Virus record (IMG/VR): IMGVR_UViG_3300025141_000016
Coordinates: 186,001-250,000 of that record
Length of the DNA: 64,000 nt
Reading direction: 5' to 3' (one strand)
The notes beneath the pieces are model-generated. The model ran no database searches, was not told the DNA's origin, and worked only from the letters and a program-made list of their open reading frames with translations. The translations under genes were made by a program, and so were the position numbers. Below are positions 2,161-62,640 of the stretch, piece after piece; positions within the stretch are counted from its first letter, which is position 1, and every line of letters begins with the position of its first letter.

Positions 2161-2175
2161 CGGTGAGGTGTCTAT
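2161..2175 (+). promoter_or_regulatory. class L (putative late) promoter motif
   Basis: CGGT-GAGGTGT-CTAT, 28 nt before ATG 2203. Confidence 0.6.
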
Positions 2176-2202
2176 CCCTTCCCCCATAGGAAGGAGGTGG
2201 CT

Positions 2203-2463
2203 ATGGAAGTCAATCCCAAAGACCCAAAGACCCTGATGGCTGCCGTTGTGGTGGTGGCAGGAGCCCTTGCGGGCGGATCCGTCCTCGGTTTCACTATCGA
2301 ACCAGAGGAAACAACTGCCCTCCGGGTAGCCAATGCGACCCTTACCGAACGGGCTTCCAACTTGGAAGCCCAAGTCGAAGGCTTGGAAGGCCGGGTAGGG
2401 GTGCTGGAGGAGATCGTAGCGGATTGCAGTAGGGTGGTCGCCGCCCTCAACACCCCCCAATAG
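2203..2463 (+). CDS. membrane-anchored coiled-coil protein (possible lysis/spanin-like)
   Basis: GGAGG RBS; hydrophobic N-terminal segment followed by a heptad pattern. Confidence 0.6.
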   Translation: MEVNPKDPKTLMAAVVVVAGALAGGSVLGFTIEPEETTALRVANATLTERASNLEAQVEGLEGRVGVLEEIVADCSRVVAALNTPQ

Positions 2464-2472
2464 AGGTCCACC

Positions 2473-2769
2473 ATGCCCACCAAAACCCCTTCCTTTGTTC
2501 TTGTGCTCGGACTCTCCCTTGCGGTGGTCACAGGTGGGCTCATCGCTGCCTTCCTGCCCCCACCAGTGTACGCCCAGGATAGCGAAGACACCTTGCAACA
2601 GGACGTGAAGTCTCTGGAAGAACGCATCCAGCAATACGGGCAGAACCTACCTGTCCCCCAAGGTCCGACACGCGAGGAACTTCAAGCGCGGATCACCGAA
2701 CTGGAAGCCGAACTGGCAACCTCCAAGGCCGCGTTGACAGCGTGCCAAAAGGCCGCCACAGAGGAATGA
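2473..2769 (+). CDS. signal/TM plus coiled-coil protein
   Basis: Hydrophobic N-terminus, AYA-like cleavage region, coiled-coil C-terminus. Confidence 0.6.
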   Translation: MPTKTPSFVLVLGLSLAVVTGGLIAAFLPPPVYAQDSEDTLQQDVKSLEERIQQYGQNLPVPQGPTREELQARITELEAELATSKAALTACQKAATEE

Positions 2770-2972
2770 TCAAGGTCACGGAAGTTCAATGGGCGGTGTT
2801 GGAAACCATGCGGGGCACTGACCGCATCTACCGGCCTCGGAGCAGCTTGGAACGCCTGGAGAAGAAAGGGCTCGTGAGCGGCAACCGGAAAGCCGGATGG
2901 ACCCTCACCGACAAGGGCAAACTCCTCACCCGTACAGCGGTGTCCTCTCTGTCGGCACACTCAATCGAGTAG
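2766..2972 (+). CDS. small winged-helix-like protein
   Basis: ATGA overlap; SLERLEKKGLV...WTLTDKG wing pattern. Confidence 0.55.
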   Translation: MIKVTEVQWAVLETMRGTDRIYRPRSSLERLEKKGLVSGNRKAGWTLTDKGKLLTRTAVSSLSAHSIE

Positions 2973-2980
2973 GGACTGTT

Positions 2981-3643
2981 TCAGTCAGCCATAAAACCGA
3001 GTTGGACCCCGGCTGGGACCGCCCATGCGTAGGGCTCATCCCAATCCATCTGCCCGTGCTTGACAGCCCACTTTGCCAGCCACAGCAGGTAGGCTTCCAA
3101 CGACTTCTGCATCGGGATCTTGACGTTCGTGGGGAGGCGGATCTCGGTGAGATCCTTGATGTTCTTGAAGATTTGCTTGTCTGGAATCTGGTCCGTCAGC
3201 TTGTACCCCTTTTCTCGGGCGGCCAACTGGTCGAACGAGAGTTTCAGCTTCATCTTTGCCATGAAGGGGAAGATGCGATCTGGGGCGTATTGCGCCGACA
3301 TACCAGCGAGACGGGCCAGTCTCTCCCGACGGGAATCATGCTTCGCCGTTGCGGTGCCGGGACACTTGGATGCGGTACGCTTCATCCCCCGGAGAGCCTT
3401 GCCCACCATAGACAGCGCATCTCCCACAAGGTCATTGACCTCTCCGCTCATGCCCTGGGATTCCAAGTAGCGTGCGGTATCCGTCAAAGCGTCTTCTGCT
3501 TTGGTGAGTTTGGGCTTGGCCGTGGCCCAAACGTAGTCCCAGTTGCCAGCCAACTTCGCCAGGATCTTCCGGCGCGTGGGGTCACCCTTGGGAAGCCCAG
3601 CGGCTTTGTGGATGAGTGCGAAACGGTCGGGGTCAGTAGGCAT
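2981..3643 (-). CDS. tag-A protein, hypothetical
   Basis: N-terminal DRFALIHKAAGLPKGDPTRRKILAKLAG; internal KRTA. Confidence 0.8.
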   Translation of the reverse strand: MPTDPDRFALIHKAAGLPKGDPTRRKILAKLAGNWDYVWATAKPKLTKAEDALTDTARYLESQGMSGEVNDLVGDALSMVGKALRGMKRTASKCPGTATAKHDSRRERLARLAGMSAQYAPDRIFPFMAKMKLKLSFDQLAAREKGYKLTDQIPDKQIFKNIKDLTEIRLPTNVKIPMQKSLEAYLLWLAKWAVKHGQMDWDEPYAWAVPAGVQLGFMAD

Positions 3644-3684
3644 GGAAGGCTCCAGTGCGGGATGCTGCTTACCCTCCCCGCCCT

Positions 3685-3698
3685 ATAGAAAACCTACC
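3685..3698 (-). promoter_or_regulatory. class L promoter motif
   Basis: GGT-AGGTTTT-CTAT, 42 nt before ATG 3643. Confidence 0.55.
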
Positions 3699-3771
3699 CA
3701 CCCCAAAAAACTGACCGACTCGTGTCCGTTTGGCGGTTCTCGTTTCGTTTCCACCTATGGAGGAACGACCC

Positions 3772-4403: not shown

Positions 4404-4418
4404 CGGTAAGGTGGCTAT
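4404..4418 (+). promoter_or_regulatory. class L promoter motif
   Basis: CGGT-AAGGTGG-CTAT, 33 nt before ATG 4451. Confidence 0.6.
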
Positions 4419-4450: not shown

Positions 4451-4588
4451 ATGCCTATTACCGCCACCAACCGAAGAACCCTCATCCGAAAAGCTGCTTC
4501 CCTACCCGTGGGATTGGCTCGGGAGGTCCAGTCGGCTCTGGGGGGTGGGAAGCTACCTGACGAGTTCGATGAGCACAGCTTTGAATGA
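4451..4588 (+). CDS. 45-aa peptide consisting mostly of a partial tag A
   Basis: GGAGA RBS; MPITATNRRTLIRKAASLPVG...; stop overlaps ATG 4585. Confidence 0.65.
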   Translation: MPITATNRRTLIRKAASLPVGLAREVQSALGGGKLPDEFDEHSFE

Positions 4589-7500
4589 TGCCCAGGCCCT
4601 CCCATAAACGAGTCGCCCGTCGTTACGCTTCCCGCACCGCGAGTGAAGCAGAGAGGTTCCCCCACGGTCCCAATGGCCCCAAGGCCGATGAGTGGTTCAG
4701 GGCATGGAGAGCACGAATAGGCCCCTACATGAGAGGAGCCTGTTACGACTTGGCGGGGTTCCTTCACGATGAAGGCGGGTTTCCCGTATGGGGGGTGATT
4801 GATGAAGACGGTATCATCGCCCACGCCTTCGCGTACAACCCCCGCATCCGAAAGGGCTTGGATGCTCGGGGTGAGGTAGACCCCGAAGATATGATGGATG
4901 GGGTAATCGGTGCCGAAAGTGTCCGTCCCCTGACCAAGAAAGAGAACCGATCTCTGTGCTCCAGATGGGGCTCCGACGAACGTGACTTCGCCCAACAGTT
5001 CGGGAAATACCTTTGGGATTTACGGGGGAGTCGTCTCGGAGCAGCCTTACGCACCGCGACCTCTACCAAGATCCCCGCAAAGACTGTCTACGCAGGGGGG
5101 TGGGAATGGAACAAGGGAGGCTTCGCGGACTGGCCTTCATTCCGACGCAAGCCCAAAAGAGAGCAGATCGCGTGGGCGAAGGAATACGTTGGCTCTGGTA
5201 TCCGCGAGCCCGTTGAGGTCACCGTGTACTCGGACGGGGGCGTGGGGTTTACGGACGGCCACCATCGAGTCATGGCGGGAACACTGCTCGACATTGAGAT
5301 CCCCGTGCGGGTCAAGTCCCGCAACTTCGACAAAGACCTGTGGCCTGACCTCCTTGCTCTGTTGAAGGCTGGGTACACACCCAAGCAGTACAACCCGCAG
5401 GGGTGGAAGCTAACCAACTCCGGTGTGCCGCCCCTGGAGGTTGTTCGCCGTGGTCCCAACGCCGCTGACGAATGGATCATGTCGAACGAGAGGGTCAAGA
5501 CCGCAGCCCGTCCCATCCGTCTCCCGACACGGGAGATCAAGGCTCTCGCCAAGAAGTTGGCGCAGCGGCTCTACCAGTGGGGGCTGCCGAAGCCCGGTCG
5601 GGTGATCGCACAGGAGTACCTGCCTCTCACCAACGTCATGGGTGACGAGGTGGAGGTCGAGATTCTACTGACGGGTACGCCCAATAAGTGGCGTGACCCG
5701 TTCAGCAGCGAACTGGTCCAAGGCGGATTCGCTCTGACGCATAAGAGGTCCGATAATCCTTTGGTGCGGATCTTTGTGAACCCGGACTTGGGCACCCGGA
5801 CGTTTGAGATGCGACCTCGCAGGATTGTCGAGAGCGAGTTGTACGAAATCCTTGCTCACGAACTCACCCATGCCGCAGACACATGGCTGGGCAAAGGCTC
5901 GGCGGTGGGCGCACTGGAAGGGCTGGGGCCGGGTTCCCACCACAACCACCCGGCAGAGGTCAAGGCACTGATGCGGGACGTGGTGACGCACCTTGAAGAT
6001 GGCGAGTACGTCCGCGAGTTGATGGGCTACGGCATGGACTTCAACACGGCTTTCCGCGAGGCACTGAAGGAAACCCAGTGGCCGGACATTGAGCCCTACC
6101 TGACTCCGAAGAACCAGAAGACCATCCTCAAAGGGGTCTACACCCACCTCCAAGACCAAGGGCTCACCAAGGCCGCGAGCAGGACCGCTGGAGGGTTCCG
6201 TCGGATCATTGATGAGATCGAAGACAAGACAGGCTTGGAGGCCAAGGTCGAGGCCGGGGCTGACAACATCAAGATCGAGTTGAAGCGCGGGACGAAGATA
6301 GTCGGCTACTTCCGAGCCTCGACGGTAGACCCAAACAGCTTCCAATGGAAGGGGGCTCCTCTGGACTGCAAAGAGGCGTGGGGTCAGATAGGGGAGCCGC
6401 CAGTCTGGATTGTCCGAGGAGCCCTGCTGAGTTGGTGGCTCCGAGGCAAGGGGTTCGGCAAGCTGCTCTACAAGGCATTGTTCTCCCACATCGCCTCCAA
6501 GAAGGGCGTTGTGGGTCCGAACCGTTGCTCCGGGGGAAACACATCACCGGATGCACAGCGGGTCTGGAAAAGCCTACGCTCGATGTACCCGAAGCATGGT
6601 CCCTTGATCGACTTGCGGAAGATGGCATCAGCCAGCCGAGTAGCCTCCCGGTTCCGCAGGATGGAAGCGGGAATGAGGACCGTCAAAGACCTTCCTGACG
6701 ACTGGTACGTCGAGATCACCGGTTCACTGTCGAATCTCGGCATCTATCTGCTGGACGGTGATGACAACACCGTAGGAAGTTTGGACATCCACCGGACAGG
6801 GGACTTCCTCCAAATCAACGAGATTCAGGCACGTCAGGGGTGGGGGCCGCTTCTTTACGATCTGGCTATGGAAGTCGCAAACGAGTTCAATGACGAGGGA
6901 CTAATGCCCGACCGTTCCTCGGTTTCGCGTGAAGCACGGGCGGTCTGGGAGCACTACCTCAATCGCCGTTCGGACGTTGAAGCGACCCTCTTGCCAGAGT
7001 GGGTACATGAACTCGCGGGTTCAGGGCACGTTCGCACACACTTGGACCGATATGAACCTGATTCCCCCCTGTCATACTCTTACCGGAAGACCACTGGAAA
7101 CCCGTTCATGCGGCAACTGGCGCTCCAAGGTCAGTTGGAGTCTGACGATTACTCTTTCGACCTCCCACGGGCCGCCGCCAGCCGTGTCGCCTCCCGGTAC
7201 GCAGGCCGAGCCTACTGCATCTGCTGGCCGACTGACGGATTGCTCTACGTCGAGGTGCCCAGCTACGACCACCTCCGCAATCTGTTGTTGACGCAGAAAT
7301 GGCGCGGGGACGCGCATTTGCGAACGAAGGACGGCTATGTCCCGTACTTCGGTGGCGGCATCGCCTTCAGCTTCACGAAGATGCGGATGAAGGGAGTCCA
7401 CCCCGTCTGGTACATCCGCAAGGGCTTCACAAAGCAACAGGCCGTGGCCCATCTGGTGGAGGATGGCTTGTTTGTGAGCGAGCGAGACGCGCTGCGTCAC

Positions 7501-9144
7501 GCTGAAGGGGATTACCCTGGCGAGTGTGAGTGGAAAGGCAAGAAGGGCCTATCGTTTACCCCGGATGCCATCGAATACGTCTGGTTAGGTAAGCGGGCAG
7601 GCAAACCGTTCGATGAGGCGAAGGCCGAGCTTCACCAGTTCATTCCCGACCTCGACGTGCGGTCGGAGGCCCCACCTTCGGGCAACAGTCCGTGCCGAGT
7701 TGCCTCCCGGTTCCGCAGGATGGAAGCGGGGCTCCTACAAGCCCCGCCGAAACTCGTCAAAGCCGTGACCGAATGGGCACAGGCCACCTTCGCTGACCGC
7801 GCCCACCACAACGCCCTGGCCAAACAGGCCAAGTTCGACCGGACAGGAGCCGGAATCATCGGGGGTCAGGACACCCTCGATCTGTGGTTCAAGAGCATGA
7901 AGCCTTGGAAGCGCACCTCCGCTGGGAAAGGGGGTGAGGTGTCCACTACGTTCGACCTCACCGACTACCTTGATGGTTGGCGGTATCGGCACCTCTGGGA
8001 CAACCTCAATGCAGGCGAGCAACGTGCTCTCCGCAAAGGCCCTCTCCGTCCGATCACCGTGACCAACGCTTTTGATGAGGGACGTTCGGGTGCCATGGGT
8101 GCTTGGTCAGACAAGAGACATGAGTTCCAAGTGTGGCTCCCCGCCGATGTCTGGATGCCAGAAGTCATCCCCGACCTTGTGGAGAAGCACGACAAACTCA
8201 TCCCGAAAACCGTTCGCCACGAGTTGCAGCACGCCACCCAAGTCATCCTCGGTGCCTTGACGGGTCAGGATTACGGGGGCCTCCCGAAACGGAAGGTGAG
8301 GCAGCCTCACAGCATCGAGGAACAACGCCAGAAGCAGATTGAGGACAACGCATCCGCATCGCGTGAAACCTTCCGCTTTCCACCAGACACGTCCAGCCCA
8401 CGCGACGACCGACGGCGAGATCGGTATTACCGCTCTGATCTGGAGTACCAGACCTCCCTCACCGATGCCGTGGGCGATTGGGAGTCCGACTCCCTACCTC
8501 CGGTGCAACGATGGTTGGACGAGACGGACCTCAATGACCGCGACAAGGGCAAGGTGCTTCGGTGGGCTGTTCGCACCTTCGTCGGTGAAGGGCGAGCACG
8601 GTTCCCCACCCTTCCGCGTGACTTCAAACGCCCTGACTGGAACCCAGGCAAGATCAAGCCGTCCGAGTTCTTTACGCACATCAAGGGCGACCGGGAGCGG
8701 TGGGCAGATGCCGTGGCGACCTTTTACAAGGAGATCGCCCGCACCACCAAACTCGCCCGCCGTGTAGCTACCCGGTATGCGAAGCGTGACTACCCGAAAG
8801 CCGGAGGCTCCGTGAGTGGGCTGCGGGTCAAAGGGGATGCCCCCAACCAGAACTCCATCAGCGCCTCGTTCTCCGACTATGAAGTGCTCCCCGACGTGCG
8901 AGAGGTACCCCTCTCCGACTTCGATGCCGCACCACATGACATGTTCTACTCGGCAAGTGACCTGGGGAGGGTCCGAGAACTCGCGGAAGCCATCGAACAC
9001 AACGGCTGGATTGCACCTCTCATCGTGGTCATAGACGATGACCCCAAGCCGTACATTCTGGAAGGAGCACACCGACTCGCCGCACTGCACACCCTGTCGA
9101 AACGAACCTTCCCCGCCCTCGTGGTGAGAGACCTCGACGGATGA
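4585..9144 (+). CDS. polyvalent polyprotein: papain-like, ParB-like, zincin, GNAT, GNAT, unknown, zincin, ParB-like; tag-B linkers
   Basis: GACY...AHAF...LDARG; DGHHR; HELTH; LRGKGFGKLLY; QGWGPLLYDL; HELQH; LEGAHRL. Modules are separated by SRVASRF/Y, RRVATRY and [KR]TA. Confidence 0.85.
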   Translation: MMPRPSHKRVARRYASRTASEAERFPHGPNGPKADEWFRAWRARIGPYMRGACYDLAGFLHDEGGFPVWGVIDEDGIIAHAFAYNPRIRKGLDARGEVDPEDMMDGVIGAESVRPLTKKENRSLCSRWGSDERDFAQQFGKYLWDLRGSRLGAALRTATSTKIPAKTVYAGGWEWNKGGFADWPSFRRKPKREQIAWAKEYVGSGIREPVEVTVYSDGGVGFTDGHHRVMAGTLLDIEIPVRVKSRNFDKDLWPDLLALLKAGYTPKQYNPQGWKLTNSGVPPLEVVRRGPNAADEWIMSNERVKTAARPIRLPTREIKALAKKLAQRLYQWGLPKPGRVIAQEYLPLTNVMGDEVEVEILLTGTPNKWRDPFSSELVQGGFALTHKRSDNPLVRIFVNPDLGTRTFEMRPRRIVESELYEILAHELTHAADTWLGKGSAVGALEGLGPGSHHNHPAEVKALMRDVVTHLEDGEYVRELMGYGMDFNTAFREALKETQWPDIEPYLTPKNQKTILKGVYTHLQDQGLTKAASRTAGGFRRIIDEIEDKTGLEAKVEAGADNIKIELKRGTKIVGYFRASTVDPNSFQWKGAPLDCKEAWGQIGEPPVWIVRGALLSWWLRGKGFGKLLYKALFSHIASKKGVVGPNRCSGGNTSPDAQRVWKSLRSMYPKHGPLIDLRKMASASRVASRFRRMEAGMRTVKDLPDDWYVEITGSLSNLGIYLLDGDDNTVGSLDIHRTGDFLQINEIQARQGWGPLLYDLAMEVANEFNDEGLMPDRSSVSREARAVWEHYLNRRSDVEATLLPEWVHELAGSGHVRTHLDRYEPDSPLSYSYRKTTGNPFMRQLALQGQLESDDYSFDLPRAAASRVASRYAGRAYCICWPTDGLLYVEVPSYDHLRNLLLTQKWRGDAHLRTKDGYVPYFGGGIAFSFTKMRMKGVHPVWYIRKGFTKQQAVAHLVEDGLFVSERDALRHAEGDYPGECEWKGKKGLSFTPDAIEYVWLGKRAGKPFDEAKAELHQFIPDLDVRSEAPPSGNSPCRVASRFRRMEAGLLQAPPKLVKAVTEWAQATFADRAHHNALAKQAKFDRTGAGIIGGQDTLDLWFKSMKPWKRTSAGKGGEVSTTFDLTDYLDGWRYRHLWDNLNAGEQRALRKGPLRPITVTNAFDEGRSGAMGAWSDKRHEFQVWLPADVWMPEVIPDLVEKHDKLIPKTVRHELQHATQVILGALTGQDYGGLPKRKVRQPHSIEEQRQKQIEDNASASRETFRFPPDTSSPRDDRRRDRYYRSDLEYQTSLTDAVGDWESDSLPPVQRWLDETDLNDRDKGKVLRWAVRTFVGEGRARFPTLPRDFKRPDWNPGKIKPSEFFTHIKGDRERWADAVATFYKEIARTTKLARRVATRYAKRDYPKAGGSVSGLRVKGDAPNQNSISASFSDYEVLPDVREVPLSDFDAAPHDMFYSASDLGRVRELAEAIEHNGWIAPLIVVIDDDPKPYILEGAHRLAALHTLSKRTFPALVVRDLDG

Positions 9145-10598: not shown

Positions 10599-10613
10599 CG
10601 GTGACTTCCCTAT
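10599..10613 (+). promoter_or_regulatory. class L promoter motif
   Basis: CGGT-GACTTCC-CTAT, 30 nt before ATG 10643. Confidence 0.65.
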
Positions 10614-11824
10614 CGGACCCGTAGGGTCAGGAGAAACTAACCATGTCCAAGACCATTACCGCTTCTGACCGGAGCCGATTGATTCGACTCGCTTCAACAA
10701 TGTCTGCTGGCTCTCCCGAGCGGAAGGCCATCCTCGCTGGGTTGTCAAAGACCGCTGGAGAACACCCGCTGGGCCGCATGGCAATCGTCTACTTCGATTT
10801 GATCATTGAGGCTTACAACATTGAGGAGGACGCGGAAAACGGTGACGAGTTCGCACAGAGCCTCATGGATGATGGTGGTCGAGGTATGAACAAGTTGGAG
10901 GGTGACGCTCTCAAAAACCTGTCCCGCATGTTCGGACAGCGAATCAGCAACGAGGGGCATGGCCCCGACGGCGCACTTGTCTGCAAGTTCCCAGTGAACT
11001 CGTGGGCAGAGGTCAAGAAAGCCAATGACGTAATCAACAAGAACCACACTGGCGGTGACGATAACATCGACACGGGCGTTCAGTACGTTGAGGCACGGGA
11101 CTTTCGCCTCCACCCGGAGGGCGTGGGACAAAATCAGGCTTTCTACGGTGAGCACTCCCGTGCAGAGGGTGATTGGGACGAGTGGCTGTCCGACCACAAG
11201 TAATCCCTATCGGACCCGTAGGGTCAGGAGAAACTAACCATGCCCAAGACCATTACCGCTTCTGACCGAGCCAGCTTGATCCGGCTCGCTTCCTGTCTAC
11301 CCGTAGAGCGGAAGGCAATCCTGGCTGGGCTCCAGAAGACGGCAGCCATGGAGCCGTGGGATTCCCCCGATTACGTCTTTGAAGACCCAAAGGATGAAGA
11401 TGACTACATCACTCTCTTTGAGGAAGGGACCACACGCCACTACGATGTGAACGTCTCTGGCCGCGTGGATTCAGCGAAGGATGGGCTCCTCCTACTCCAC
11501 AAGGAGTTCGGTCGTGGGGGTAAGGAAAGCCGCGACTTTGAGGGTCAGTACCTCTGGGGGACAGGCTACTCCATCACAGCGATCCCCCCAAACAATCTGT
11601 CCTATGAGCGGTGGCATAACGACAAGGCCCACTTGGCAAAGATCCACAAGGTTCTGGACAGGATCAAGAAGATGCCAGGAGTCAAAAAGGTCAGCTTGGA
11701 GGAACGGCCCGACAGTGCAGACCTGCATAAGAAACAAGGGCAGGCCATGAAGCGGTGGGTCGCCAAGGGTCGGACCCTGCGAACTGCGAAGAAGACACCC
11801 TATCGGACCCGTAGGGTCAGGAGA
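10608..11824 (+). repeat. three exact 27-nt leader repeats CCCTATCGGACCCGTAGGGTCAGGAGA
   Basis: Copies at 10608-10634, 11205-11231 and 11798-11824, each followed by ATG and a tag-A coding sequence; internal hairpin GACCC-GTA-GGGTC. Confidence 0.95.
10643..11203 (+). CDS. tag-A protein, hypothetical cargo
   Basis: MSKTITASDRSRLIRLASTMSAGSPERKAILAGLSKTA. Confidence 0.85.
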   Translation: MSKTITASDRSRLIRLASTMSAGSPERKAILAGLSKTAGEHPLGRMAIVYFDLIIEAYNIEEDAENGDEFAQSLMDDGGRGMNKLEGDALKNLSRMFGQRISNEGHGPDGALVCKFPVNSWAEVKKANDVINKNHTGGDDNIDTGVQYVEARDFRLHPEGVGQNQAFYGEHSRAEGDWDEWLSDHK

Positions 11825-16200: not shown

Positions 16201-16274
16201 GAGAAGTCTCCATTGGCCCGTCATTCGGGCTCGTGGGGGGTGTTTTGTGTGGGTAGCGGGGCTCCCTACACTCC

Positions 16275-37940: not shown

Positions 37941-37955
37941 CGGTATTCCCCCTAT
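37941..37955 (+). promoter_or_regulatory. class L promoter motif
   Basis: CGGT-ATTCCCC-CTAT, 38 nt before ATG 37993. Confidence 0.6.
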
Positions 37956-40974: not shown

Positions 40975-40989
40975 ATAGACGACCTACCG
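40975..40989 (-). promoter_or_regulatory. class L promoter motif
   Basis: CGGT-AGGTCGT-CTAT, 29 nt before ATG 40946; back-to-back with the 40999 copy. Confidence 0.65.
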
Positions 40990-40998: not shown

Positions 40999-41013
40999 CG
41001 GTAGGCCGCCTAT
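40999..41013 (+). promoter_or_regulatory. class L promoter motif
   Basis: CGGT-AGGCCGC-CTAT, 43 nt before ATG 41056. Confidence 0.65.
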
Positions 41014-49248: not shown

Positions 49249-49470
49249 CTACCGTTTGAGGAAGGCGGCGGCGACACCCCATCCCTTCGACGTGAGCCGA
49301 CGGGGCTCTTTCTTGGTGATCCAGCCCTTTGTCAGTGCATGGTGGTGGTAGGGGCAAGGCCCCGAAACCGGGATGGAACCCAGAGGGTTTTTCAAGCAGT
49401 GGTCGGCCCACTTGATCATCACCTTCCGAGTCATCTGGTTGATGAACGCCTCTTCGCCTTTCGATCTCAT
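49249..49470 (-). CDS. small winged-helix-like protein
   Basis: GGAGA RBS; KGWI...LTSKGW. Confidence 0.6.
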   Translation of the reverse strand: MRSKGEEAFINQMTRKVMIKWADHCLKNPLGSIPVSGPCPYHHHALTKGWITKKEPRRLTSKGWGVAAAFLKR

Positions 49471-49520: not shown

Positions 49521-49535
49521 CGGTACTCATGCTAT
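49521..49535 (+). promoter_or_regulatory. class L promoter motif
   Basis: CGGT-ACTCATG-CTAT, 30 nt before ATG 49565. Confidence 0.65.
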
Positions 49536-49564: not shown

Positions 49565-50578
49565 ATGTCCGAACTTCACCTGTATGACTTCGACGGAACA
49601 CTGTTCCGAAGTCCCCATGAGCCTGCGGTGTGGGATGGTCAGTGGTGGAACGACGTGCGCTCCCTGATCCCCCCGTGTGTCCCACAGAAGCCGGGGGCTG
49701 ATTGGTGGGTCAACCAAACTGTCAGCAGTGCCAAGCAGTCGATCTCCGACCCAGACGTGTTTGCCATGATGATCACAGGGAGGAATGCAAACTCGGGTCT
49801 TCGGTTCCGGGTGCCAGAACTCCTCAAACAGCGAGGGCTCAACTTCGATGAGGTCCATCTGACCCCCGTTAGCAGCACCCTGGGGTACAAGAAGAAGCTG
49901 CTGGGGAATACGTTGGGGCGGTATCCCCTCATCGACACCGTGCGGATGTGGGACGACAGACCCTCACACCTCCGAGCCTTCGCGCAGGTTGCGGAGAAGA
50001 TGGGGATTGACCCCGAAAACATCCATGCCACCCAGGTCCGGGCCAAGTCCAAAGACCCCGAGTGCGAAGAAGACAGCCCAGCAGGGGGTGGTTTCCTGTC
50101 AGACCCCCCTCCAATCGGAGACGTGTGCCGATATGTAGGGGTTTTTCTTGATGCTTCTTCCAAGGCAGCCCTGTCACATGCGTTCCCTTTTGCCCACAAC
50201 AAGATCAAGAACGACCATGTGACCCTCTGCCTTGGCCCCGCTCTTGGGGGAAACATAGCGGAGGGTGCCCTCGATCTCCTGGGAACGAAGGTACGCATGA
50301 AGGTGATTGGCTACGCCGAGGATGAGGATGGGCAAGCAGTAGTGGTTTCTGTTCCCCCCGGACTCATCTCGGACGCTTCCAGAATCCCTCATGTCACCTT
50401 GTCCATCTCGGACTCGGTGCAGTCCAAGTACAGCAACACTCTCCTCCGCAAAGGGTGGGAGCGTGTTCGCGGCCCCGCCATCAGTGGGGTGATTGATATG
50501 TTTCCGCGCTCCATGCGAAGGCAAGCAAGTGCAGTTCGGGTAGCCTTCCTGCATTCTCGCTTGGGCCGTAGCGGGTAG
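49565..50578 (+). CDS. HAD phosphatase (Swiss-Army-knife RNA-repair type) fused to a 2H phosphoesterase
   Basis: LYDFDGTLFRSP, ITGR, MWDDR; two HVT motifs; C-terminal RQASAVRVAFLH. Confidence 0.8.
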   Translation: MSELHLYDFDGTLFRSPHEPAVWDGQWWNDVRSLIPPCVPQKPGADWWVNQTVSSAKQSISDPDVFAMMITGRNANSGLRFRVPELLKQRGLNFDEVHLTPVSSTLGYKKKLLGNTLGRYPLIDTVRMWDDRPSHLRAFAQVAEKMGIDPENIHATQVRAKSKDPECEEDSPAGGGFLSDPPPIGDVCRYVGVFLDASSKAALSHAFPFAHNKIKNDHVTLCLGPALGGNIAEGALDLLGTKVRMKVIGYAEDEDGQAVVVSVPPGLISDASRIPHVTLSISDSVQSKYSNTLLRKGWERVRGPAISGVIDMFPRSMRRQASAVRVAFLHSRLGRSG

Positions 50579-50587
50579 CCTCTCTAT
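50574..50587 (+). promoter_or_regulatory. class L promoter motif
   Basis: GGT-AGCCTCT-CTAT, 30 nt before ATG 50617. Confidence 0.65.
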
Positions 50588-50616: not shown

Positions 50617-51942
50617 ATGGCCCATGACGACGATGCAAAGAAAACCAGTGAGACTCCGTTTTCTCTGACGCAGAACCCCGCTCCGAACCCTGTGACGGGG
50701 TTGGCGTACAAGACCCAGAAACGGGATCTTGTAGAGAAGATCCTGGCGACGTTCCGGTCTGTGCTGCCGAGCAACTATGTCGCACAGGTCAATGGCCCCT
50801 GGTACTCGTTGCAGTTTCAGGCGATGGCCGAGCAGTTGGCCGAGATCCAAATCTTGGGGACCGAGGTCTACAAAGACTCTGATTGGGACTTCACGCGCAC
50901 AGACTTCTTGTGGCAAGTGCTGGGGTCACTCGTTTTTCCAGGGGCGACTGACCGCTCGGGCATCCCGGCCATCGACGGGGACACCGCCTATCGGCAGTTC
51001 CTACATAAGATGGTGTTGTTTCTGTTGGACGGAGCCACCAAAGCCAGCCTGGAAAGAGGGTTAGAGGCCCTTGATCCCGATGTGGTGGCCACCATCACCG
51101 AGAGGTATCTGGAGTCCCCCCCTCGTGATGAAGATGGGGCCTTCACCATTGATGACCAGTTCGTCATCGACGTTTTCATCGAGGGGGCAGCACCCAACAC
51201 CTTCCCTGCTGACCCCTTCGTTCTCCAGCAGAACGCGGAACTGGTGCTGGCAGCCTTGAAGCCAGCGCACGTCATCTATTCGTACTCCTACTTGTTCCGC
51301 GATGCCTTCGACAAGATCGCGGATGACAGTGGGGGCCTTTCCCTTGATCTCGACTCCTATTACTACGCCGACCTGCGGAAGTGGTGTCTGGGTGCCCAGC
51401 GCATCACCGGATCCGGGGACACCCTCACCAACCGGATGCACTTTTCGGACCCCACCAAGTCCTTCCAGAACGTCCGGGCTGGGGCAATCCTCACCTTATC
51501 CGCTGGTGCTAACAAGGGTCGCTATCGGGTGGTGTCAAAGAGGGTTCTCCTGGGGGGCATCGACCCAACATCAGTGACCTACACCCTCTCCACGTCCCTT
51601 GTTCTCACAGGGACTCTGACCGCTCCTGGCGTGGATACGGTGACATTGAGCGCGGCCCCTGATTGGAGCCTCATCCCAGTGGACACCACCATCACCATTG
51701 GAAGTGGGATCAACGCTGGGACGTATCGCTTGGACACAGTGCTGGGGCCAACGGGAGGACCAGTGGGAACTGTTGGGATCAGTGGCGCACAGGTGCGCCT
51801 GTCCCCCAGCATCCTTCAGGTGGAACGCCGAATGTTGAGCACGTTGAATGCTCAAGCCTATGAGGTCGGTGTGGATCGACTCGGGGTACAACTCCCCCAC
51901 GTTGTTGCTGGTGAGAACGTCTCCACCCAGTTCCTTTTGTGA
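50617..51942 (+). CDS. baseplate wedge-like structural protein
   Basis: LPSNY...DTAYRQFL...GAT...LKPAHV as in P2 gpI/Mu gp48-type proteins; T/G-rich beta C-terminus. Confidence 0.65.
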   Translation: MAHDDDAKKTSETPFSLTQNPAPNPVTGLAYKTQKRDLVEKILATFRSVLPSNYVAQVNGPWYSLQFQAMAEQLAEIQILGTEVYKDSDWDFTRTDFLWQVLGSLVFPGATDRSGIPAIDGDTAYRQFLHKMVLFLLDGATKASLERGLEALDPDVVATITERYLESPPRDEDGAFTIDDQFVIDVFIEGAAPNTFPADPFVLQQNAELVLAALKPAHVIYSYSYLFRDAFDKIADDSGGLSLDLDSYYYADLRKWCLGAQRITGSGDTLTNRMHFSDPTKSFQNVRAGAILTLSAGANKGRYRVVSKRVLLGGIDPTSVTYTLSTSLVLTGTLTAPGVDTVTLSAAPDWSLIPVDTTITIGSGINAGTYRLDTVLGPTGGPVGTVGISGAQVRLSPSILQVERRMLSTLNAQAYEVGVDRLGVQLPHVVAGENVSTQFLL

Positions 51943-52777: not shown

Positions 52778-52792
52778 CGGTAAGTCCTCTAT
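52778..52792 (+). promoter_or_regulatory. class L promoter motif
   Basis: CGGT-AAGTCCT-CTAT, 32 nt before ATG 52824. Confidence 0.65.
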
Positions 52793-52823: not shown

Positions 52824-53201
52824 ATGTCTGACCAACCCAGTACCCGGCGAGTGGCCCGTGCGTTCCAAGCGGCACGAAACACCCGCCGCCTCAAAGAAGC
52901 CCTGGAGGCATACCTCCACTCCATCCAAATCGAATCCGAGCAGATGATGGATGACCCCAAGTGGGGGAAGGGGGGCAAGTATGACCCCGTAGCGGATGCC
53001 GGTGTTTGGATCGGGGACCGGGCCAAGGACGAAGCGGGGGCCGATGTGGTGCTCCACTTTGATGGGGCTGGGTATGACTATTTCTACTACGGGTCACGCA
53101 TGGCTGAACCTCACCGCAAGGCGGTGAGGGCCATCGCCAAGAAGCTGGGCTACGAGATGGAAGACAACACCAACTGGAACATCGGCTTCTACCCGAGATA
53201 A
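52824..53201 (+). CDS. tag-B protein, hypothetical cargo
   Basis: MSDQPSTRRVARAFQAA. Confidence 0.75.
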   Translation: MSDQPSTRRVARAFQAARNTRRLKEALEAYLHSIQIESEQMMDDPKWGKGGKYDPVADAGVWIGDRAKDEAGADVVLHFDGAGYDYFYYGSRMAEPHRKAVRAIAKKLGYEMEDNTNWNIGFYPR

Positions 53202-58175: not shown

Positions 58176-58823
58176 GGTGAACCTCCTTTACAGGAGGGGA
58201 CGATAGACGATCTACGGAACGAAGGCGCAGTTGGACCCGGACAGCGAGTCCGTGATCGGAAAAGCGGAGTGGGATGGATAGGTGTAGGTGTATGGGTGGT
58301 GTTGCTACTACTACGGGAAGGAGTCTTTTGATGAAGGATCGGAGGATCATTATTGAGTGTCTGATTTATTTTGAATCGGTCAACCTAACGGTTTCCCTCT
58401 CCTAAACAGAGTCTATTGAGTCTGTCGTCCCCCTCCTGCGCCAGTGAGGGGGTAGAGGATGCCGAAGGTGAAGGATCCGATTTCCGAGCAGCACGCCTTT
58501 TGACTCCCTCTCTCCTTTCCCGAGGTGAGAGGGGTGGTGTCAAAAGGGCCGAGCGAAGACTGATCCCGAGAACCCGTCCCCTTTACAGGGGGGTGGGTCA
58601 ACCCTTGAAGTTCCGAATGGGAAAGAGCGAGCAAGCGGGGGTGTTCCTTACCCCTCGGGTTTCCCCGATCAAACAACCCAAAGATTCAGTCAAGCACCGA
58701 TCTGGCGACCGGCCTAAATGTCCCGTGAGTTTCTGACACCCCCTCCGAAGAGGGGGACTTACCGGGTAGGGTCTACTCGGATCGGGGGGTCTTCGCAACC
58801 CCCCTTCTCCGGGGAGGGGCGCT

Positions 58824-59178: not shown

Positions 59179-60201
59179 GTGAATCACCCGGACCCCAAAC
59201 GAGTTGCTATCGCTGTGTCTCCGCAGCATCAGGCGGCTCGGGTAGCGGCTCGCTACGCCTCCTCCCCTCTGATAAAGGAGTTGGAGGAAGACTACCATTC
59301 CCTCTGGCATGACAAGCATGAAAGGGAGGACGGAAAGCCTCGGCTGTGCCCACTGAAAGCTGGGGTGCCCGATTGTGAGAAGATGACCCTCAAAGAGTTC
59401 GTTGCCAAGTGGAAGAGGCACGGGCTGAAGGCGGTAAAGGTCCAACGGCTTCCTACCACCTACTCCTACTATGACTGTGGGAGCCACGCCACGCTGCGGA
59501 CGGAACAGATCCATGGCAGCCGACTTTACCCCCAAGGCGACATCACGGTTGACTTGAACACCCCCATTCCTTGGAGCAAGGCGAAGAAAGGCGACTGGGT
59601 TCAATGGCCATGGCACCACGGAGTGGTGATTGATCCCAAGCGCAAGATTGTGGAGAGTTGTTGGGGGGTAGACGGATGGGTGTTTCAACACCCCGTAGAC
59701 CTTTCTACTTATGGGGCGAAGCCTACGGTTCATTCCGTGCATCCAAAAGAGAAGACCAAGACCGCCAGTTCTGATGGTCAGTGTATCGTCGGAGGCCAGT
59801 GCTTCCGCTACGCTGTCATGTGGGATGGCAAAGGCCCAGGATCATCCCCTGACGACATTGTTGTTCACGGGAACGTGCATGGCTTGGTCGGTCCTCACGC
59901 CTGGGTCGAGCGGAAGGACGGTCGCGTATTTGACTGGCAGACGGTTGAGGGGATCTGGGAGACGCTTGGCCGTCAACCTGACCCCAGCTACACCAAGCGC
60001 GGCTGGCCGAAGCGTGAGTTCTACGCGGAGTTCAAGCCGCGCAAGATGAAGCGGTACACCGCCGAAGACGCGCTGATCAACGGGATACGGAACCGGCACT
60101 ACGGTCCCTGGGACGCGGATGAGGAGTACCGTCCTCCAATCCGATCAGCATCGCGGGTTGCCGCTCGCTACTTGATGGCTTCTCGGCGGCAACGCCGGTA
60201 G
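59179..60201 (+). CDS. tag-B protein with two papain/transglutaminase-like (Cys-His-acid) domains
   Basis: AARVAARY; YDCGSHA...HHGVV...VESCWG; KTKTAS junction; GQCFRYA...PHAWVE...VFD; C-terminal SASRVAARY. Confidence 0.75.
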   Translation: MNHPDPKRVAIAVSPQHQAARVAARYASSPLIKELEEDYHSLWHDKHEREDGKPRLCPLKAGVPDCEKMTLKEFVAKWKRHGLKAVKVQRLPTTYSYYDCGSHATLRTEQIHGSRLYPQGDITVDLNTPIPWSKAKKGDWVQWPWHHGVVIDPKRKIVESCWGVDGWVFQHPVDLSTYGAKPTVHSVHPKEKTKTASSDGQCIVGGQCFRYAVMWDGKGPGSSPDDIVVHGNVHGLVGPHAWVERKDGRVFDWQTVEGIWETLGRQPDPSYTKRGWPKREFYAEFKPRKMKRYTAEDALINGIRNRHYGPWDADEEYRPPIRSASRVAARYLMASRRQRR

Positions 60202-60210
60202 CTTCTTTAT
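60196..60210 (+). promoter_or_regulatory. class L promoter motif (TTAT variant)
   Basis: CGGT-AGCTTCT-TTAT, 34 nt before ATG 60244. Confidence 0.55.
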
Positions 60211-60243: not shown

Positions 60244-60693
60244 ATGTCCAAGACCCTTACTGGATCTGACCGTAAACGCCTCATCCGCCTTGCTTCTACC
60301 CTCCCCACGGGGTCAGATGAGCGGAAGGCTATCCTTGCTGGGCTTCACCATGTCGCCGTCCACAAGACCGCCTCCAAGAAGACCACCCTCTCGGCAGATT
60401 TGAAGTTGAAGGACGGGACCGTGTACGCGAAGGGATCGCGTGCAGAGGTGTTCTTCTCGGAGCGCAACCCCTCCATGTCCGAGGTGGAGATTGAGGGTAG
60501 GAAGATCAAACTCCGCACGGTCAGTCTCCACAAGTACCTCCGTGGTTTTCCAAAGCCCCCCTCCACGAGAGCCTTGCAGAAGATGGACAGTGAGGCTTCC
60601 GGGCCAACGGTCAGTGGGGTACGCAACGTCGAGATGGACGGCTATGGTCCCGATGGGTCACCCTCGTGGATGCTGGCCATGGGGCTCATCTGA
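60244..60693 (+). CDS. tag-A protein, hypothetical cargo
   Basis: MSKTLTGSDRKRLIRLASTLPTGSDERKAILAGL...HKTAS. Confidence 0.85.
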   Translation: MSKTLTGSDRKRLIRLASTLPTGSDERKAILAGLHHVAVHKTASKKTTLSADLKLKDGTVYAKGSRAEVFFSERNPSMSEVEIEGRKIKLRTVSLHKYLRGFPKPPSTRALQKMDSEASGPTVSGVRNVEMDGYGPDGSPSWMLAMGLI

Positions 60694-60773
60694 CCCTGTG
60701 CGCCTCGGTGGTCGCTCCGTGAAGGGGGTCAACCACCTACCGAATGTCCGTAGAGGGCACAACGGAGAATGGT

Positions 60774-61229
60774 ATGAGCGCATCCCCCCAGAAAGTAGCC
60801 GAGCGGTGGGCCTCCGAAGCCAAGTTCTTCCGTGGCCTCCACAGTCGCAACAAGGGCATCTTCTTTCGTGGGGCCAAGAACCCCGGTGCCGGTGGCGGGG
60901 CTGGCTTTGGTGCTCTGGGACGTGGCCTTTATCTCGCGTGGGACAAGGGGATCGCCCAGTTCTTTGCTGACCGAGCCGGGGGTCAGGTATACGCCTACAA
61001 GATTCCGTCCAGCCTCAAACTGCTCGATGCCCAGAGCAGCGAGATGGCGACGATCAAGGAAGGGATGGGATTCAAGCCCTGGCAGTATTCAGACGATCCC
61101 ATGTACGCCGCTGTCGTCACAGCCGAGGTAAAAGACCTTGGATACGACGGGGTGATCTCCGACAAAGCGGCAGATGGCCTTGTCTTGTTCGATCCCCGTA
61201 AAGCGAAGCTGGTGGACCTACCGGAGTGA
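60774..61229 (+). CDS. tag-B ADP-ribosyltransferase-like protein
   Basis: SPQKVAERW; FFRG...LGRGLYLA...GYDGVI...LVLFDP. Confidence 0.7.
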   Translation: MSASPQKVAERWASEAKFFRGLHSRNKGIFFRGAKNPGAGGGAGFGALGRGLYLAWDKGIAQFFADRAGGQVYAYKIPSSLKLLDAQSSEMATIKEGMGFKPWQYSDDPMYAAVVTAEVKDLGYDGVISDKAADGLVLFDPRKAKLVDLPE

Positions 61230-62384
61230 TGCAGCGACGGCGTAGGACTCGCCGGGAGCCTCGTCCAGAAGCCCCTGCTCACAGAGGTATGCGATTGCGC
61301 GGCGGGTGTCGGCAGCGTCGAGCCGGAGGTCTGACTGGATTTCCTCGCGGGTTGACCATGGCTCATCGGCCACGAGCCGCAGGATGCGTTCGGCGTTTCC
61401 AACGGTGACTGGACCGTCACGAAGAGACTTGCGAACTCGTCCGGCAAGGTGGGCTGCTCGGAGGGTGGAGACACCTTCGCTGGCAGCGATCTCATCGCGG
61501 GTAGCCCCAGCGATCAAAGCGTCGTAGACCCGCTGATAACGCTCGGCGGCTCCTCGGTGGGCAGCACGGACGAGAGCACGACCGCCTGTGGTCTGGATTG
61601 TGTCTTCGTCGGTGAGGATGAGCATATCTTCCGGGCTCGGGCTCCGAGAGATGATCACCTCATGGAGATCATCCTCGTCTCCCTCGTAGGCGACTTCCCA
61701 CTCGGTCCCCTGGTTGGCCCGCTGGCAAACGTACTCGGGGGATTCTGTCTCGACGCGAACTCGGATCTCGTGCTGGGTCCGTGCCCCACGCATCCGAGCG
61801 AGGGGTTCTGCGCCTCGGACGAAGACGCTGGAGAAGTGCTTGCGCTTCAGAAACTTGTAGAGCGTGGAGAGCGATACGGTGCCTTTCTCGGCCAGTGCCT
61901 TGTCGAAGGTGCCACCTGCGGCCCATTTGGCGATCCAGAGCCCCGTCAACGAGAGACATTCGGCGTAGTCTTCGGAGGGGTAGTCGCGGGAGAGCAGCGC
62001 GGCGAGTCGGCGGTCCAGGGCGCGGTCGCGCAGTTGGGCTTCCAGCCATTCTGATGAGGTCAGCGGTGCGGCTTCATCGACCAGGGAGGAGAGGTGGGTC
62101 GTCACCGTCTCGTGGTCGTCTGACCGGAGGTGGGAGAGCAGCCCAGCCGCGTCACCCTGGAGAGCAGACCAGAGGTCAGCGCAGAGGAGGGCTTGTGAGC
62201 CGGTGCCCCGGTAGCCGTTCTGGTTCACGGAGTCGCGTCGAACGATACTCCGTTTGCGGGCCGTGGCTTTGGCGAGGTCGGTGATCCCGGCTGCGACCAG
62301 CGATTCAACTTCGCTGGGAGTCTGGGGGGAAGCACCGTGGATGAGATCGAGCAGGGAGAGCAGGTATGAGAGTCGTCGGGTCAT
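61218..62384 (-). CDS. sigma-factor-like protein (region 4 HTH) with an extra C-terminal winged helix
   Basis: PSPEDML...RVYDALIAGATRDEIAASEGVS...RVRKSLR; STREEIQSDLRL...LCEQGLL. Confidence 0.6.
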   Translation of the reverse strand: MTRRLSYLLSLLDLIHGASPQTPSEVESLVAAGITDLAKATARKRSIVRRDSVNQNGYRGTGSQALLCADLWSALQGDAAGLLSHLRSDDHETVTTHLSSLVDEAAPLTSSEWLEAQLRDRALDRRLAALLSRDYPSEDYAECLSLTGLWIAKWAAGGTFDKALAEKGTVSLSTLYKFLKRKHFSSVFVRGAEPLARMRGARTQHEIRVRVETESPEYVCQRANQGTEWEVAYEGDEDDLHEVIISRSPSPEDMLILTDEDTIQTTGGRALVRAAHRGAAERYQRVYDALIAGATRDEIAASEGVSTLRAAHLAGRVRKSLRDGPVTVGNAERILRLVADEPWSTREEIQSDLRLDAADTRRAIAYLCEQGLLDEAPGESYAVAASLR

Positions 62385-62497
62385 GGGATTCCTTGGAGTT
62401 CCGATGCCAGCAAGCTGGACAGGATGGGTGAGTGGTTTTTGGTCGAGGACGGGGACGGTGCTCTTACCGAGCGGGTCAAGGTCTGCGACTTCTCAAC

Positions 62498-62526
62498 ATC
62501 CTATCCGCCGTGACCCTATGGGTCAA
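62498..62526 (-). promoter_or_regulatory. sigma70-like promoter for the 62384 gene
   Basis: TTGACC-N17-TAGGAT. Confidence 0.45.
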
Positions 62527-62625
62527 CCCCACCTTGGCCATCAAGTGGATCGAAGTGGGCCAGATGCGGCCCCGTGCCCCATGCTTATTTTTTGGCGGGG
62601 GGATCACCCCTGATCAGGGTGGTGT

Positions 62626-62640
62626 CGGTAGGTCGTCTAT
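62626..62640 (+). promoter_or_regulatory. class L promoter motif
   Basis: CGGT-AGGTCGT-CTAT, 45 nt before ATG 62685. Confidence 0.65.

What the first reader, a model, noticed from the sequence alone, without database searches (positions are those of the whole stretch)
2161..62640. Compact late-type promoter motif (C)GGT-N7-CTAT links tagged cargo genes to structural genes
Seen: 13 sites, at 2161, 3685(-), 4404, 10599, 37941, 40975(-), 40999, 49521, 50574, 52778, 59136, 60196 (TTAT variant) and 62626. Each is on the coding strand 28-45 nt before a start codon, including a back-to-back pair at 40975/40999. Downstream genes are tagged proteins, baseplate- and neck-like genes, membrane or lipoproteins and the helicase. 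I did not notice the motif before the 15-34 kb genes or nrdJ/holA/holB. A 7-base motif would give a few chance hits in 64 kb, so the evidence is the tight positioning. Inference: a late promoter with no canonical -35/-10 geometry, read by a phage-encoded factor.
Basis: partly seen in the sequence, partly recalled or inferred. Interest (0 to 1): 0.68.

Follow-up and report, generated by a model that had tools for sequence, protein, structure and literature searches.

The report
Compact phage promoter-like motif CGGTAG-N5-CTAT
An uncultured giant phage carries about 47 copies of a rigid 15-base signal (CGGTAG, five free bases, CTAT) about 30 bases ahead of its head, tail, lysis and some DNA-repair genes; it is most likely a phage-specific middle/late promoter unlike standard bacterial promoters, but no transcription start has been mapped.

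Summary
All 13 sites are at the stated coordinates. The window has 16 GGT-N7-CTAT matches against 2.8 expected. The window is part of a 297-kb IMG/VR huge-phage record, which has 60 matches. Of these, 41 lie 15-70 nt upstream of a same-strand start codon (p about 1e-49).

The refined element is C-GGTAG-N5-CTAT with rigid spacing. Neither half is positioned on its own, and nothing upstream is conserved. A weaker GTA(G/A/T) element lies 13-14 nt downstream. The motif is kept upstream of the helicase gene in related uncultured phages down to about 45% helicase identity, while its flanks diverge.

The motif precedes portal, tail-fibre, baseplate, sheath and endolysin operons, but also helicase, recombination and clamp-loader operons. 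It is therefore middle/late rather than purely late.

No phage RNA polymerase was found. A conserved gene pair, a NusG-like protein next to a protein with two sigma region-4 domains, is a candidate reader. CGGTAG equals the core of the RfaH ops site. Transcription starts are unmapped, so promoter function is inferred at about 0.6.

The parts
2161..2175 (+). Class B site CGGTGAGGTGTCTAT, 27 nt before ORF 2203-2463
3685..3699 (-). Class B site GGGTAGGTTTTCTAT, 41 nt before minus-strand gene 2981-3643
4404..4418 (+). Class B site CGGTAAGGTGGCTAT, 32 nt before small ORF 4451-4588, which overlaps the 1519-aa ParB-like ORF 4585-9144
10599..10613 (+). Class B site CGGTGACTTCCCTAT, 29 nt before gene 10643-11203
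37941..37955 (+). Class B site CGGTATTCCCCCTAT, 37 nt before the ATG at 37993
40975..40989 (-). Class B site CGGTAGGTCGTCTAT, 28 nt before minus-strand gene 40053-40946; one of the back-to-back pair
40999..41013 (+). Class B site CGGTAGGCCGCCTAT, 42 nt before the UvrD-like helicase 41056-44637; kept at this position in relatives
49521..49535 (+). Class B site CGGTACTCATGCTAT, 29 nt before gene 49565-50578 (PNK/HAD-like)
50573..50587 (+). Class B site GGGTAGCCTCTCTAT, 29 nt before gene 50617-51942
52778..52792 (+). Class B site CGGTAAGTCCTCTAT, 31 nt before gene 52824-53201; kept in the 88% relative L015
59136..59150 (+). Class B site CGGTAGGAGCCCTAT, 28 nt before gene 59179-60201
60196..60210 (+). 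Variant site CGGTAGCTTCTTTAT (TTAT), 33 nt before gene 60244-60693
62626..62640 (+). Class B site CGGTAGGTCGTCTAT, 44 nt before gene 62685 onward; heads a long operon with RecD/Dda-like and SbcC-like genes
58203..58217 (-).

Best explanation
The element is a phage-specific transcription initiation signal, here called class B. It is a rigid 15-bp sequence, C-GGTAG-N5-CTAT, on the coding strand, and is used about 47 times in the 297-kb record for middle/late operons.

It has no -35/-10 geometry. Because a Shine-Dalgarno sequence follows almost every site and begins at least 15 nt after CTAT, transcription must start at or within about 14 nt downstream of CTAT. Two sub-models fit: a start at the TA of CTAT, or a start at the GTA(G/A/T) element 13-14 nt further on.

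No phage RNA polymerase gene is detectable in this record or in a complete 436-kb relative. The most likely reader is therefore the host core RNA polymerase redirected by phage protein(s).

Shown: the existence, positioning, rigidity, strand specificity and conservation of the motif, and the two-class partition.
For: - Enrichment and positioning: 16 against 2.8 expected in the window. Genome-wide, 41 of 60 hits lie in the 15-70 nt upstream zone, p about 1e-49, with little or no positioning in controls. It is the top dyad in an unbiased scan.
- Consensus: C at -1 in 36/40, A in 35/40, G in 30/40, with no information upstream.
- Rigid spacing: GGTA-N6-CTAT has 41 hits, 34 of them positioned, while all other spacings from N0 to N15 are at background. 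CGGTAG without CTAT occurs 207 times and only 4 are positioned.
- Obligate promoter positions: 14 of 44 first genes after a strand switch carry it, including three divergent regions with a full or variant site on both sides (25/26, 217/218, and 48/49 where class A faces class B).
- Conservation upstream of the helicase gene at -35 to -42 in six lineages, including this phage, with 45-88% helicase identity in the relatives, while flanks and spacer diverge. In L132 the site follows a hairpin plus T9 terminator.
- The complete relative G003 keeps C-G-n-T-A-G-N5-CTAT and the downstream GTAG. Orthologue pairs share the site more often than chance (OR 8.4, p = 0.013).
- Complementary class A: about 23 sites before the DNA pol A, MoxR/VWA, kinase and phosphoesterase genes.
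- Class B precedes portal, tail-fibre-like, baseplate J, sheath and endolysin genes.
- SD constraint: 46 of 47 sites have an SD, beginning at least 15 nt after CTAT except for one mis-called start.
- No T7-like RNAP with a T7 positive control, no RpoB/RpoC domains and no DFDGD motif.
Against: - No transcription start is mapped.
- In co-directional operons a processing or factor-loading site would look the same.
- 23 of 44 obligate unit starts carry neither class A nor class B, so other promoters exist that I cannot see. A hidden promoter upstream of class B sites therefore cannot be excluded.
- The motif is patchy in relatives: absent as an exact pattern in L131 and L132, and not enriched in G004-G006 or LR745208.
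- Only 4 of 19 G000 class B genes keep an exact or near-exact site in G003.
- The record is only about 67% complete, so a divergent RNA polymerase could be missed. The complete relative G003 argues against this.
- My gene calls come from a home-made ORF scorer.
Confidence: 0.6

Rival explanations
1. The element is an ops-like loading or pause site rather than a promoter. CGGTAG is exposed in the non-template strand of an elongating polymerase in the 5' leader and recruits the phage's NusG paralogue (P0082), as RfaH is recruited at ops. This would make the long late operons termination-resistant and couple them to ribosomes.
For: - The hexamer equals ops positions C3-G8 of GGCGGTAGCGTG, the hairpin that RfaH reads (PMC5995543).
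- The spacer has a weak pyrimidine (70%) then G (58%) two bases after the hexamer, as in ops T11-G12.
- The motif lies on the coding (non-template) strand in leaders.
- The phage encodes a NusG-family protein: AF2 pLDDT 84; Foldseek E 1e-9 to NusG and 5e-7 to RfaH in the ops-paused complex; profile E 3e-6 to full-length NusG.
Against: - CGGTAG alone shows no positioning (4 of 207). The invariant CTAT at a rigid distance has no counterpart in ops.
- If the pause were at CTAT, the hexamer would lie 8-13 nt behind the RNA 3' end, outside a 10-11 nt elongation bubble.
- No conserved promoter lies upstream of the sites, even in 109-bp divergent regions.
- About 47 sites, often several per operon, is excessive for a factor that stays bound once loaded.
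- P0082 itself lies in a class B operon.
Confidence: 0.13
2. The 15-mer is a double-stranded binding site for an activator. The candidate is the tandem sigma-4 HTH protein P0081, with one HTH per half-site one helical turn apart. The site would overlap the -35 region, the downstream GTA(G/A/T) would be the -10-like element, and the start would be about 26 nt after CTAT, as in T4 MotA or Mu Mor/C promoters.
For: - The half-site centres are about 10 bp apart and the spacing is rigid.
- GTA(G/A/T) lies 13-14 nt after CTAT in 14 of 22 sites with long leaders, against 12% in controls, and is also seen in G003.
- The same GTATAG-like element ends class A and appears alone before some other genes.
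- P0081 has two Sigma70_r4 domains (E 6e-15) and a confident all-helical model. Its single domains match SigF and ECF sigma region 4.
Against: - A start about 26 nt after CTAT would fall at or beyond the start codon for the roughly 25 sites with 33 nt or less, and would leave their conserved SD untranscribed.
- The distance from the downstream element to the ATG varies from 6 to 15 nt, so it does not fit precise leaderless starts.
- The last position of the putative -10 hexamer shows no T preference.
- P0081 orthologues occur in phages without the motif.
Confidence: 0.14
3. The element acts at the RNA level in the 5' leader, as a processing site, a binding site for a translational regulator, or a stabilising 5' structure.
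For: - Its distance to the start codon is fixed and short.
- The first 26 leader nt fold slightly better than shuffles (mean z -0.6; one third below -1).
Against: - Pairing between the motif and its own downstream sequence is no better than with other sites' sequences (-7.3 against -7.5 kcal/mol, p = 0.69).
- There is no Rfam match.
- A separate, unseen promoter would be needed at every divergent site.
Confidence: 0.06

Closest known systems
T4-type late promoters (TATAAATA, read by gp55/gp33 with host core RNAP)
   Same: - Dozens of short promoters with no -35 element, placed directly before late genes of a large myovirus.
- Host polymerase redirected by small phage proteins.
- Short leaders.
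   Different: - The sequence is unrelated. This element is bipartite (6 + 4 bases with a rigid N5) and G+C-rich.
- No gp55-like region-2 protein was recognised.
- The class also covers DNA-metabolism operons.
T7/SP6-class single-subunit RNAP promoters
   Same: - A compact contiguous element ending in CTAT(A) just before the likely start (SP6: GGTGACACTATAG).
- An upstream specificity block.
- No -35/-10 geometry.
   Different: No T7-like RNAP gene in the record or in the complete relative, although the same search finds T7's own gene. The spacing between GGT and CTAT also differs.
RfaH ops element (GGCGGTAGnnTG)
   Same: - Identical CGGTAG core on the non-template strand.
- A NusG paralogue is encoded by the phage.
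   Different: - ops is a pause site inside a transcribed leader, typically one per operon leader, and has no CTAT half.
- Here both halves and their spacing are required, and the sites sit where promoters must be.
Sigma-54 (-24/-12) promoters TGGCAC-N5-TTGC
   Same: - Same 6-N5-4 layout with GG at the same positions.
- A start about 12 nt downstream would coincide with the GTAG element and respect the SD constraint.
   Different: - The near-invariant GC of the -12 element is AT here.
- I did not search the record specifically for a sigma-54 or enhancer-binding-protein gene; none turned up among the proteins scanned.
Jumbo-phage non-virion RNAP promoters (phiKZ TATG, AR9)
   Same: A short, start-proximal consensus in a huge phage.
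   Different: No split beta/beta' genes and no DFDGD catalytic motif were found.

Membership tests
Sigma-70 -35/-10 promoter | A TTGACA-like hexamer 17 +/- 1 bp upstream of a TAnnnT hexamer | tested here: not met
   No information content upstream of C(-1) in 40 aligned sites. No TAnnnT is present at a fixed offset.
T7-like single-subunit RNAP promoter | A cognate single-subunit RNAP gene (Pfam PF00940) in the phage | tested here: not met
   No match at E <= 1 in G000 or in the complete relative G003. The T7 control scored 1e-110.
T7-like single-subunit RNAP promoter | A conserved block running up to +1 | not testable with these tools
   The start site is unmapped. The SD constraint only places it at most about 14 nt after CTAT.
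RfaH ops element | The CGGTAG hairpin core (C3-G8) on the non-template strand | tested here: met
   The consensus C-GGTAG lies on the coding strand. The ops12 sequence and its hairpin come from PMC5995543.
RfaH ops element | The T11-G12 pause dinucleotide two bases after the core | tested here: inconclusive
   Pyrimidine in 28/40 and G in 23/40 at the equivalent positions.
RfaH ops element | The hexamer is sufficient and lies within a transcribed leader downstream of a promoter | tested here: not met
   CGGTAG without CTAT is not positioned (4/207). No upstream promoter motif was found.
Sigma-54 promoter | GG-N10-GC | tested here: not met
   GG is present, but the position of GC is occupied by the invariant AT of CTAT.
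phiKZ/AR9-type multisubunit phage RNAP system | Split beta/beta' homologues with a DFDGD motif | tested here: not met
   PF00562 and PF00623 gave no match, and no [AGSN][AD][DFY]DGD motif occurs in six frames.
NusG/Spt5 family (for P0082) | An NGN domain followed by a KOW domain | tested here: met
   AF2 pLDDT 84. Foldseek probability 1.00 to NusG, RfaH and Spt5 over both domains. Profile E 3e-6 to full-length NusG.
Sigma-70 family (for P0081) | Region 2 (melts the -10 element) plus region 4 | tested here: not met
   Two region-4 domains and no region 2. It is sigma-4-like, not a sigma factor.

The most novel reading that the evidence does not exclude
The adjacent, syntenically conserved genes for a NusG-family protein (P0082) and a protein made of two sigma region-4 domains (P0081) together form a split, sigma-like initiation factor. 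The NGN domain would sit on the beta' clamp helices where sigma region 2 normally binds. There it would read CGGTAG as a small hairpin in the non-template strand at the upstream edge of the open bubble, as RfaH reads ops, but during initiation, with transcription starting at the TA of CTAT 7-8 nt downstream. This would be the first case of a NusG paralogue acting as a promoter-specificity subunit.
Probability: 0.08. Interest if true: 0.9.

Novelty: new variant of a known kind. Interest (0 to 1): 0.58.

Why it matters
Huge uncultured phages are known almost only from sequence, and their gene-expression programmes are essentially uncharted.

This work gives a two-class promoter map for one such clade, probably marine (one homologue is labelled as from a Planctomycetaceae MAG, which may be a binning artefact). 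Class A covers early-type genes and class B covers head, tail, lysis and part of DNA metabolism. That lets unannotated genes be sorted by likely timing without cultivation.

The class B element has a geometry not described for any sigma factor or phage polymerase that I could match. The phage appears to lack its own RNA polymerase, which implies an unrecognised way of redirecting host polymerase.

Two further observations define a concrete, testable candidate mechanism. The first is the conserved NusG-like/double-sigma-4 gene pair, whose double-sigma-4 family has 542 clusters in metagenomes. The second is the identity of the hexamer with the RfaH ops core.

Tried and rejected
- **Hairpin between motif and leader.** By eye the motif and downstream leader looked complementary. 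This was rejected: same-site duplex energy equals permuted pairs.
- **5'-leader hairpin.** Only a weak trend.
- **Flexible spacing or a single half-site.** Rejected.
- **Chance or composition.** Rejected by shuffles and control patterns.
- **Terminators just upstream of the sites in this genome.** Only 1 of 47.
- **Near-identical DNA.** None in GenBank phages. The class A pattern has no exact match in IMG/VR. An identical 150-kb IMG/VR contig (L014) is the same phage, not an independent relative.
- **Metagenome contigs.** Whole records behind encoding-contig loci could not be searched.
- **Presence of P0081 as a predictor of the motif.** Fails. Orthologues occur in G004-G006 and LR745208, where the exact motif is not enriched.
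- **Complex prediction of P0081 with P0082.** Weak support only: score 0.56, best of 3 controls 0.24. The mark was reached by 58 of 80 solved complexes and 2 of 110 mismatched pairs, but at 0.60 or under by only 7 of those 80 and by both mismatches that passed. Runs agree in at least 68% of contacts, and partner pLDDT is at least 81. I do not count this as evidence of binding.
- **The 1343-aa and 3818-aa ORFs as hidden polymerases.** No PDB or PHROG similarity.
- **Literature.** Searches found no description of this motif.
- **Rfam.** No family in the window.

Full report
**Source.** The window is bases 186,001-250,000 of a single 297,104-bp IMG/VR virus record. The record is 59.5% G+C, and CheckV estimates it to be 67% complete. 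It has no near-identical relative in GenBank phages. I called 291 genes with a codon-bias ORF scorer of my own.

**Checking the observation.** GGT-N7-CTAT occurs 16 times in the window, against 2.77 expected and a maximum of 7 in 100 shuffles. All 13 listed sites are present.

Genome-wide there are 60 hits. Of these, 41 lie 15-70 nt upstream of a same-strand start, a zone that is 2.7% of sequence space (binomial p about 1e-49). Reversed, complemented and base-altered control patterns show little or no such positioning, at most 5 of 60 hits in the zone. An unbiased count of all 4-mer/gap/4-mer dyads in the 291 upstream regions puts GGTA-N6-CTAT first, with 34 regions against 0.24 expected.

**Refined anatomy.**
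- Aligning 40 positioned sites gives C-GGTAG-N5-CTAT: C in 36/40, A in 35/40, G in 30/40. The spacer shows a weak pyrimidine then G, and there is no information at all upstream.
- The exact 10-base consensus occurs 25 times, 22 of them positioned. One-mismatch variants occur 29 times, 19 of them positioned. About 47 sites in total meet the criteria.
- Spacing is rigid. Every other gap from 0 to 15 is at background, and the 207 copies of CGGTAG that lack CTAT are not positioned.
- The distance from CTAT to the start codon is 22-67 nt, with a median of 32.
- 46 of 47 sites have a Shine-Dalgarno sequence, which begins at least 15 nt after CTAT except for one mis-called start.
- A secondary element, GTA(G/A/T), begins 13-14 nt after CTAT in 14 of 22 long-leader sites, against 12% in controls.

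**What I ruled out about structure.** By eye the CTA of the motif seemed to pair with a downstream TAG. However, duplex energies between each motif and its own leader (-7.3 kcal/mol) are no better than with other sites' leaders (-7.5; p = 0.69). The leaders fold only slightly better than shuffles (mean z -0.6). Rfam finds nothing in the window.

**A second class gives context.** The same dyad scan revealed about 23 copies of a 40-nt element: an A/T run, then GGGGGTTCAACTC-N8-TATCTCCGTATA (class A). Eight copies lie in the window at about 16.3-25.1 kb. Class A resembles ECF-type AAC-N15-CGTA promoters and contains a G-run/C-run inverted repeat.

Gene content partitions between the two classes:
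- Class A precedes the DNA polymerase A operon, a MoxR AAA+/VWA pair, an AAA_33 kinase, a metallophosphoesterase and a weak PARP-like protein.
- Class B precedes the portal operon, giant beta-helix/LamG tail-fibre-like proteins, a baseplate J protein, a sheath-like 1829-aa protein and an endolysin.
- Class B also precedes a UvrD-like helicase, a 1519-aa ParB-like protein, a Topo IB/HAD/PNK protein and a PNK-like protein. It heads one long operon with RecD/Dda-like and SbcC-like genes, and another operon with Toprim, clamp-loader, NusG-like and double-sigma-4 genes.

Class B is therefore middle/late rather than strictly late. The nrdJ block lies downstream of a variant site at window 58203(-), with no real gap in between.

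**Promoter-like behaviour.** Of 44 first genes after a strand switch, which must each have a promoter, 14 carry class B, 6 carry class A and 1 carries a two-mismatch class B variant. The other 23 carry neither. In the 109-bp region between genes at 40946 and 41056, two class B elements stand back to back about 10 bp apart, and nothing else is conserved. Some unexplained starts carry a bare GGTATAG-like element.

**Conservation.** The helicase has many homologues on long metagenomic contigs. Upstream of the helicase gene, 35-42 nt before the start, the following are found:

| Lineage | Helicase identity | Site |
|---|---|---|
| This phage (G000) | 100% | CGGTAGGCCGCCTAT |
| L015 | 88% | CGGTAATCGGCTTAT |
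| L016 | 62% | CGGTAGGGGTTCTAT |
| L017 | 54% | CGGTAAGGTGTCTAT |
| L018 | 47% | CGGTAGCGGTTCTAT |
| L132 | 45% | CGTTAGCGACTTTAT |

Flanks and spacer are unrelated between lineages. In L132 the site directly follows a hairpin plus T9 terminator. L016 keeps the same back-to-back pair, and L017 has 7 positioned sites in 23.5 kb.

The complete 435.8-kb relative G003 (40% helicase identity) uses a different dominant motif, GGTCTTATCT-N11-AGAGTAGTCTAGG. It still keeps C-G-n-T-A-G-N5-CTAT with GTAG at +13. Orthologous genes share a site more often than chance, but only in 4 of 19 cases. The exact motif is not enriched in more distant huge phages.

**Who reads it.** No T7-like polymerase was found, although the T7 control was. 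No RpoB or RpoC domains and no DFDGD motif were found either.

A sigma-family search hit one gene, at genome 271749-272357. Its product, P0081 (202 aa), has two Sigma70_r4 domains and no region 2. The gene immediately upstream encodes P0082 (182 aa). Its model (pLDDT 84) matches NusG, RfaH and Spt5 over both the NGN and KOW domains, and its profile matches full-length NusG. This gene pair is syntenic in five phages whose proteins are 27-50% identical. The P0081 family has 542 clusters in metagenomes. A complex prediction for the pair gave weak support only: 0.56 against a best control of 0.24.

Both genes lie in a class B operon, so they cannot be the sole trigger of class B.

**The ops coincidence.** CGGTAG is exactly the C3-G8 hairpin core of the RfaH ops site GGCGGTAGCGTG, in which G5 and T6 are read by the NGN domain (PMC5995543). 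This supports a rival reading, a loading site for the phage NusG paralogue.

Three points argue against that rival. CTAT is required at a rigid distance. No upstream promoter is present. If the pause were at CTAT, the hexamer would lie too far behind the RNA 3' end for an elongation bubble.

The same geometry does fit an open promoter bubble with a start at the TA of CTAT. This is the basis of the speculative novel case.

**Verdict.** The motif is real, rigid, directional and conserved in a clade of uncultured huge phages. It is most likely a middle/late promoter with no known consensus (about 0.6).

Noticed in passing
window about 16240-25140: cores at 16275(-), 17002(-), 17515(-), 20227(-), 21575(-), 23415(-), 24638(-), 25109(+); about 23 copies genome-wide: A second, highly conserved 40-nt promoter-like class: an A/T run, then GGGGGTTCAACTC-N8-TATCTCCGTATA. 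It precedes early-type genes. It resembles ECF-type AAC-N15-CGTA promoters and contains a G-run/C-run inverted repeat around TTCAACT. Relatives have related versions: GGTTCAG-N17-GCGTAGT in L131 and GGTCTTATCT-N11-AGAGTAGTCTAGG in G003.
   Followed up: partly
outside the window: genome 271208-272357 (+), locus L121:1017-2163: Adjacent genes for a NusG/RfaH-fold protein (P0082) and a protein made of two sigma-70 region-4 domains (P0081). The pair is syntenic in five distantly related huge phages. The P0081 family has 542 clusters in metagenomes.
   Followed up: partly
window 24563-25182: A 620-bp non-coding region between two divergent class A promoters. It holds a perfect 20-bp inverted repeat (24762-24806), a 14-bp inverted repeat (24858-24893), a tandem 13-mer (24809-24834) and repeated TCTGTTCAGTG. 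It may be a replication origin or a regulatory hub.
   Followed up: partly
window 58176-58823: A 648-bp intergenic region with an unusually A+T-rich stretch and no called gene. There is no Rfam match.
   Followed up: no
window 4585-9144; genome 124830-127847 and 170287-172839: Three very large proteins (1519, 1005 and 850 aa) carry ParB-like or ParB C-terminal domains. A relative (L016) has a 1643-aa homologue with faint ART-PolyVal and ParB_N hits.
   Followed up: no
genome 155169-166625 (L009:169-11622): A 3818-aa ORF with no PHROG or PDB sequence similarity. It sits in a block with weak baseplate and tape-measure hits.
   Followed up: partly
window 49249-49470(-) upstream; genome 95824-95870, 106167-106219 and others: Several obligate unit starts that lack both classes carry a bare (C)GGTATAG(T/A) element 20-40 nt before the start. 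This may be a third, minimal promoter type related to the 3' end of class A.
   Followed up: partly
P0093 (homologue of P0082): One homologue lies on a 141-kb NCBI contig labelled as a Planctomycetaceae MAG, and related contigs come from marine samples. This may hint at the host, or it may be a binning artefact.
   Followed up: no
genome 136174-136188 (-), outside the window: A well-formed site, CGGTAATGGTCCTAT, lies between convergent genes with no minus-strand gene downstream for 2.4 kb. It may drive an antisense or non-coding transcript.
   Followed up: no
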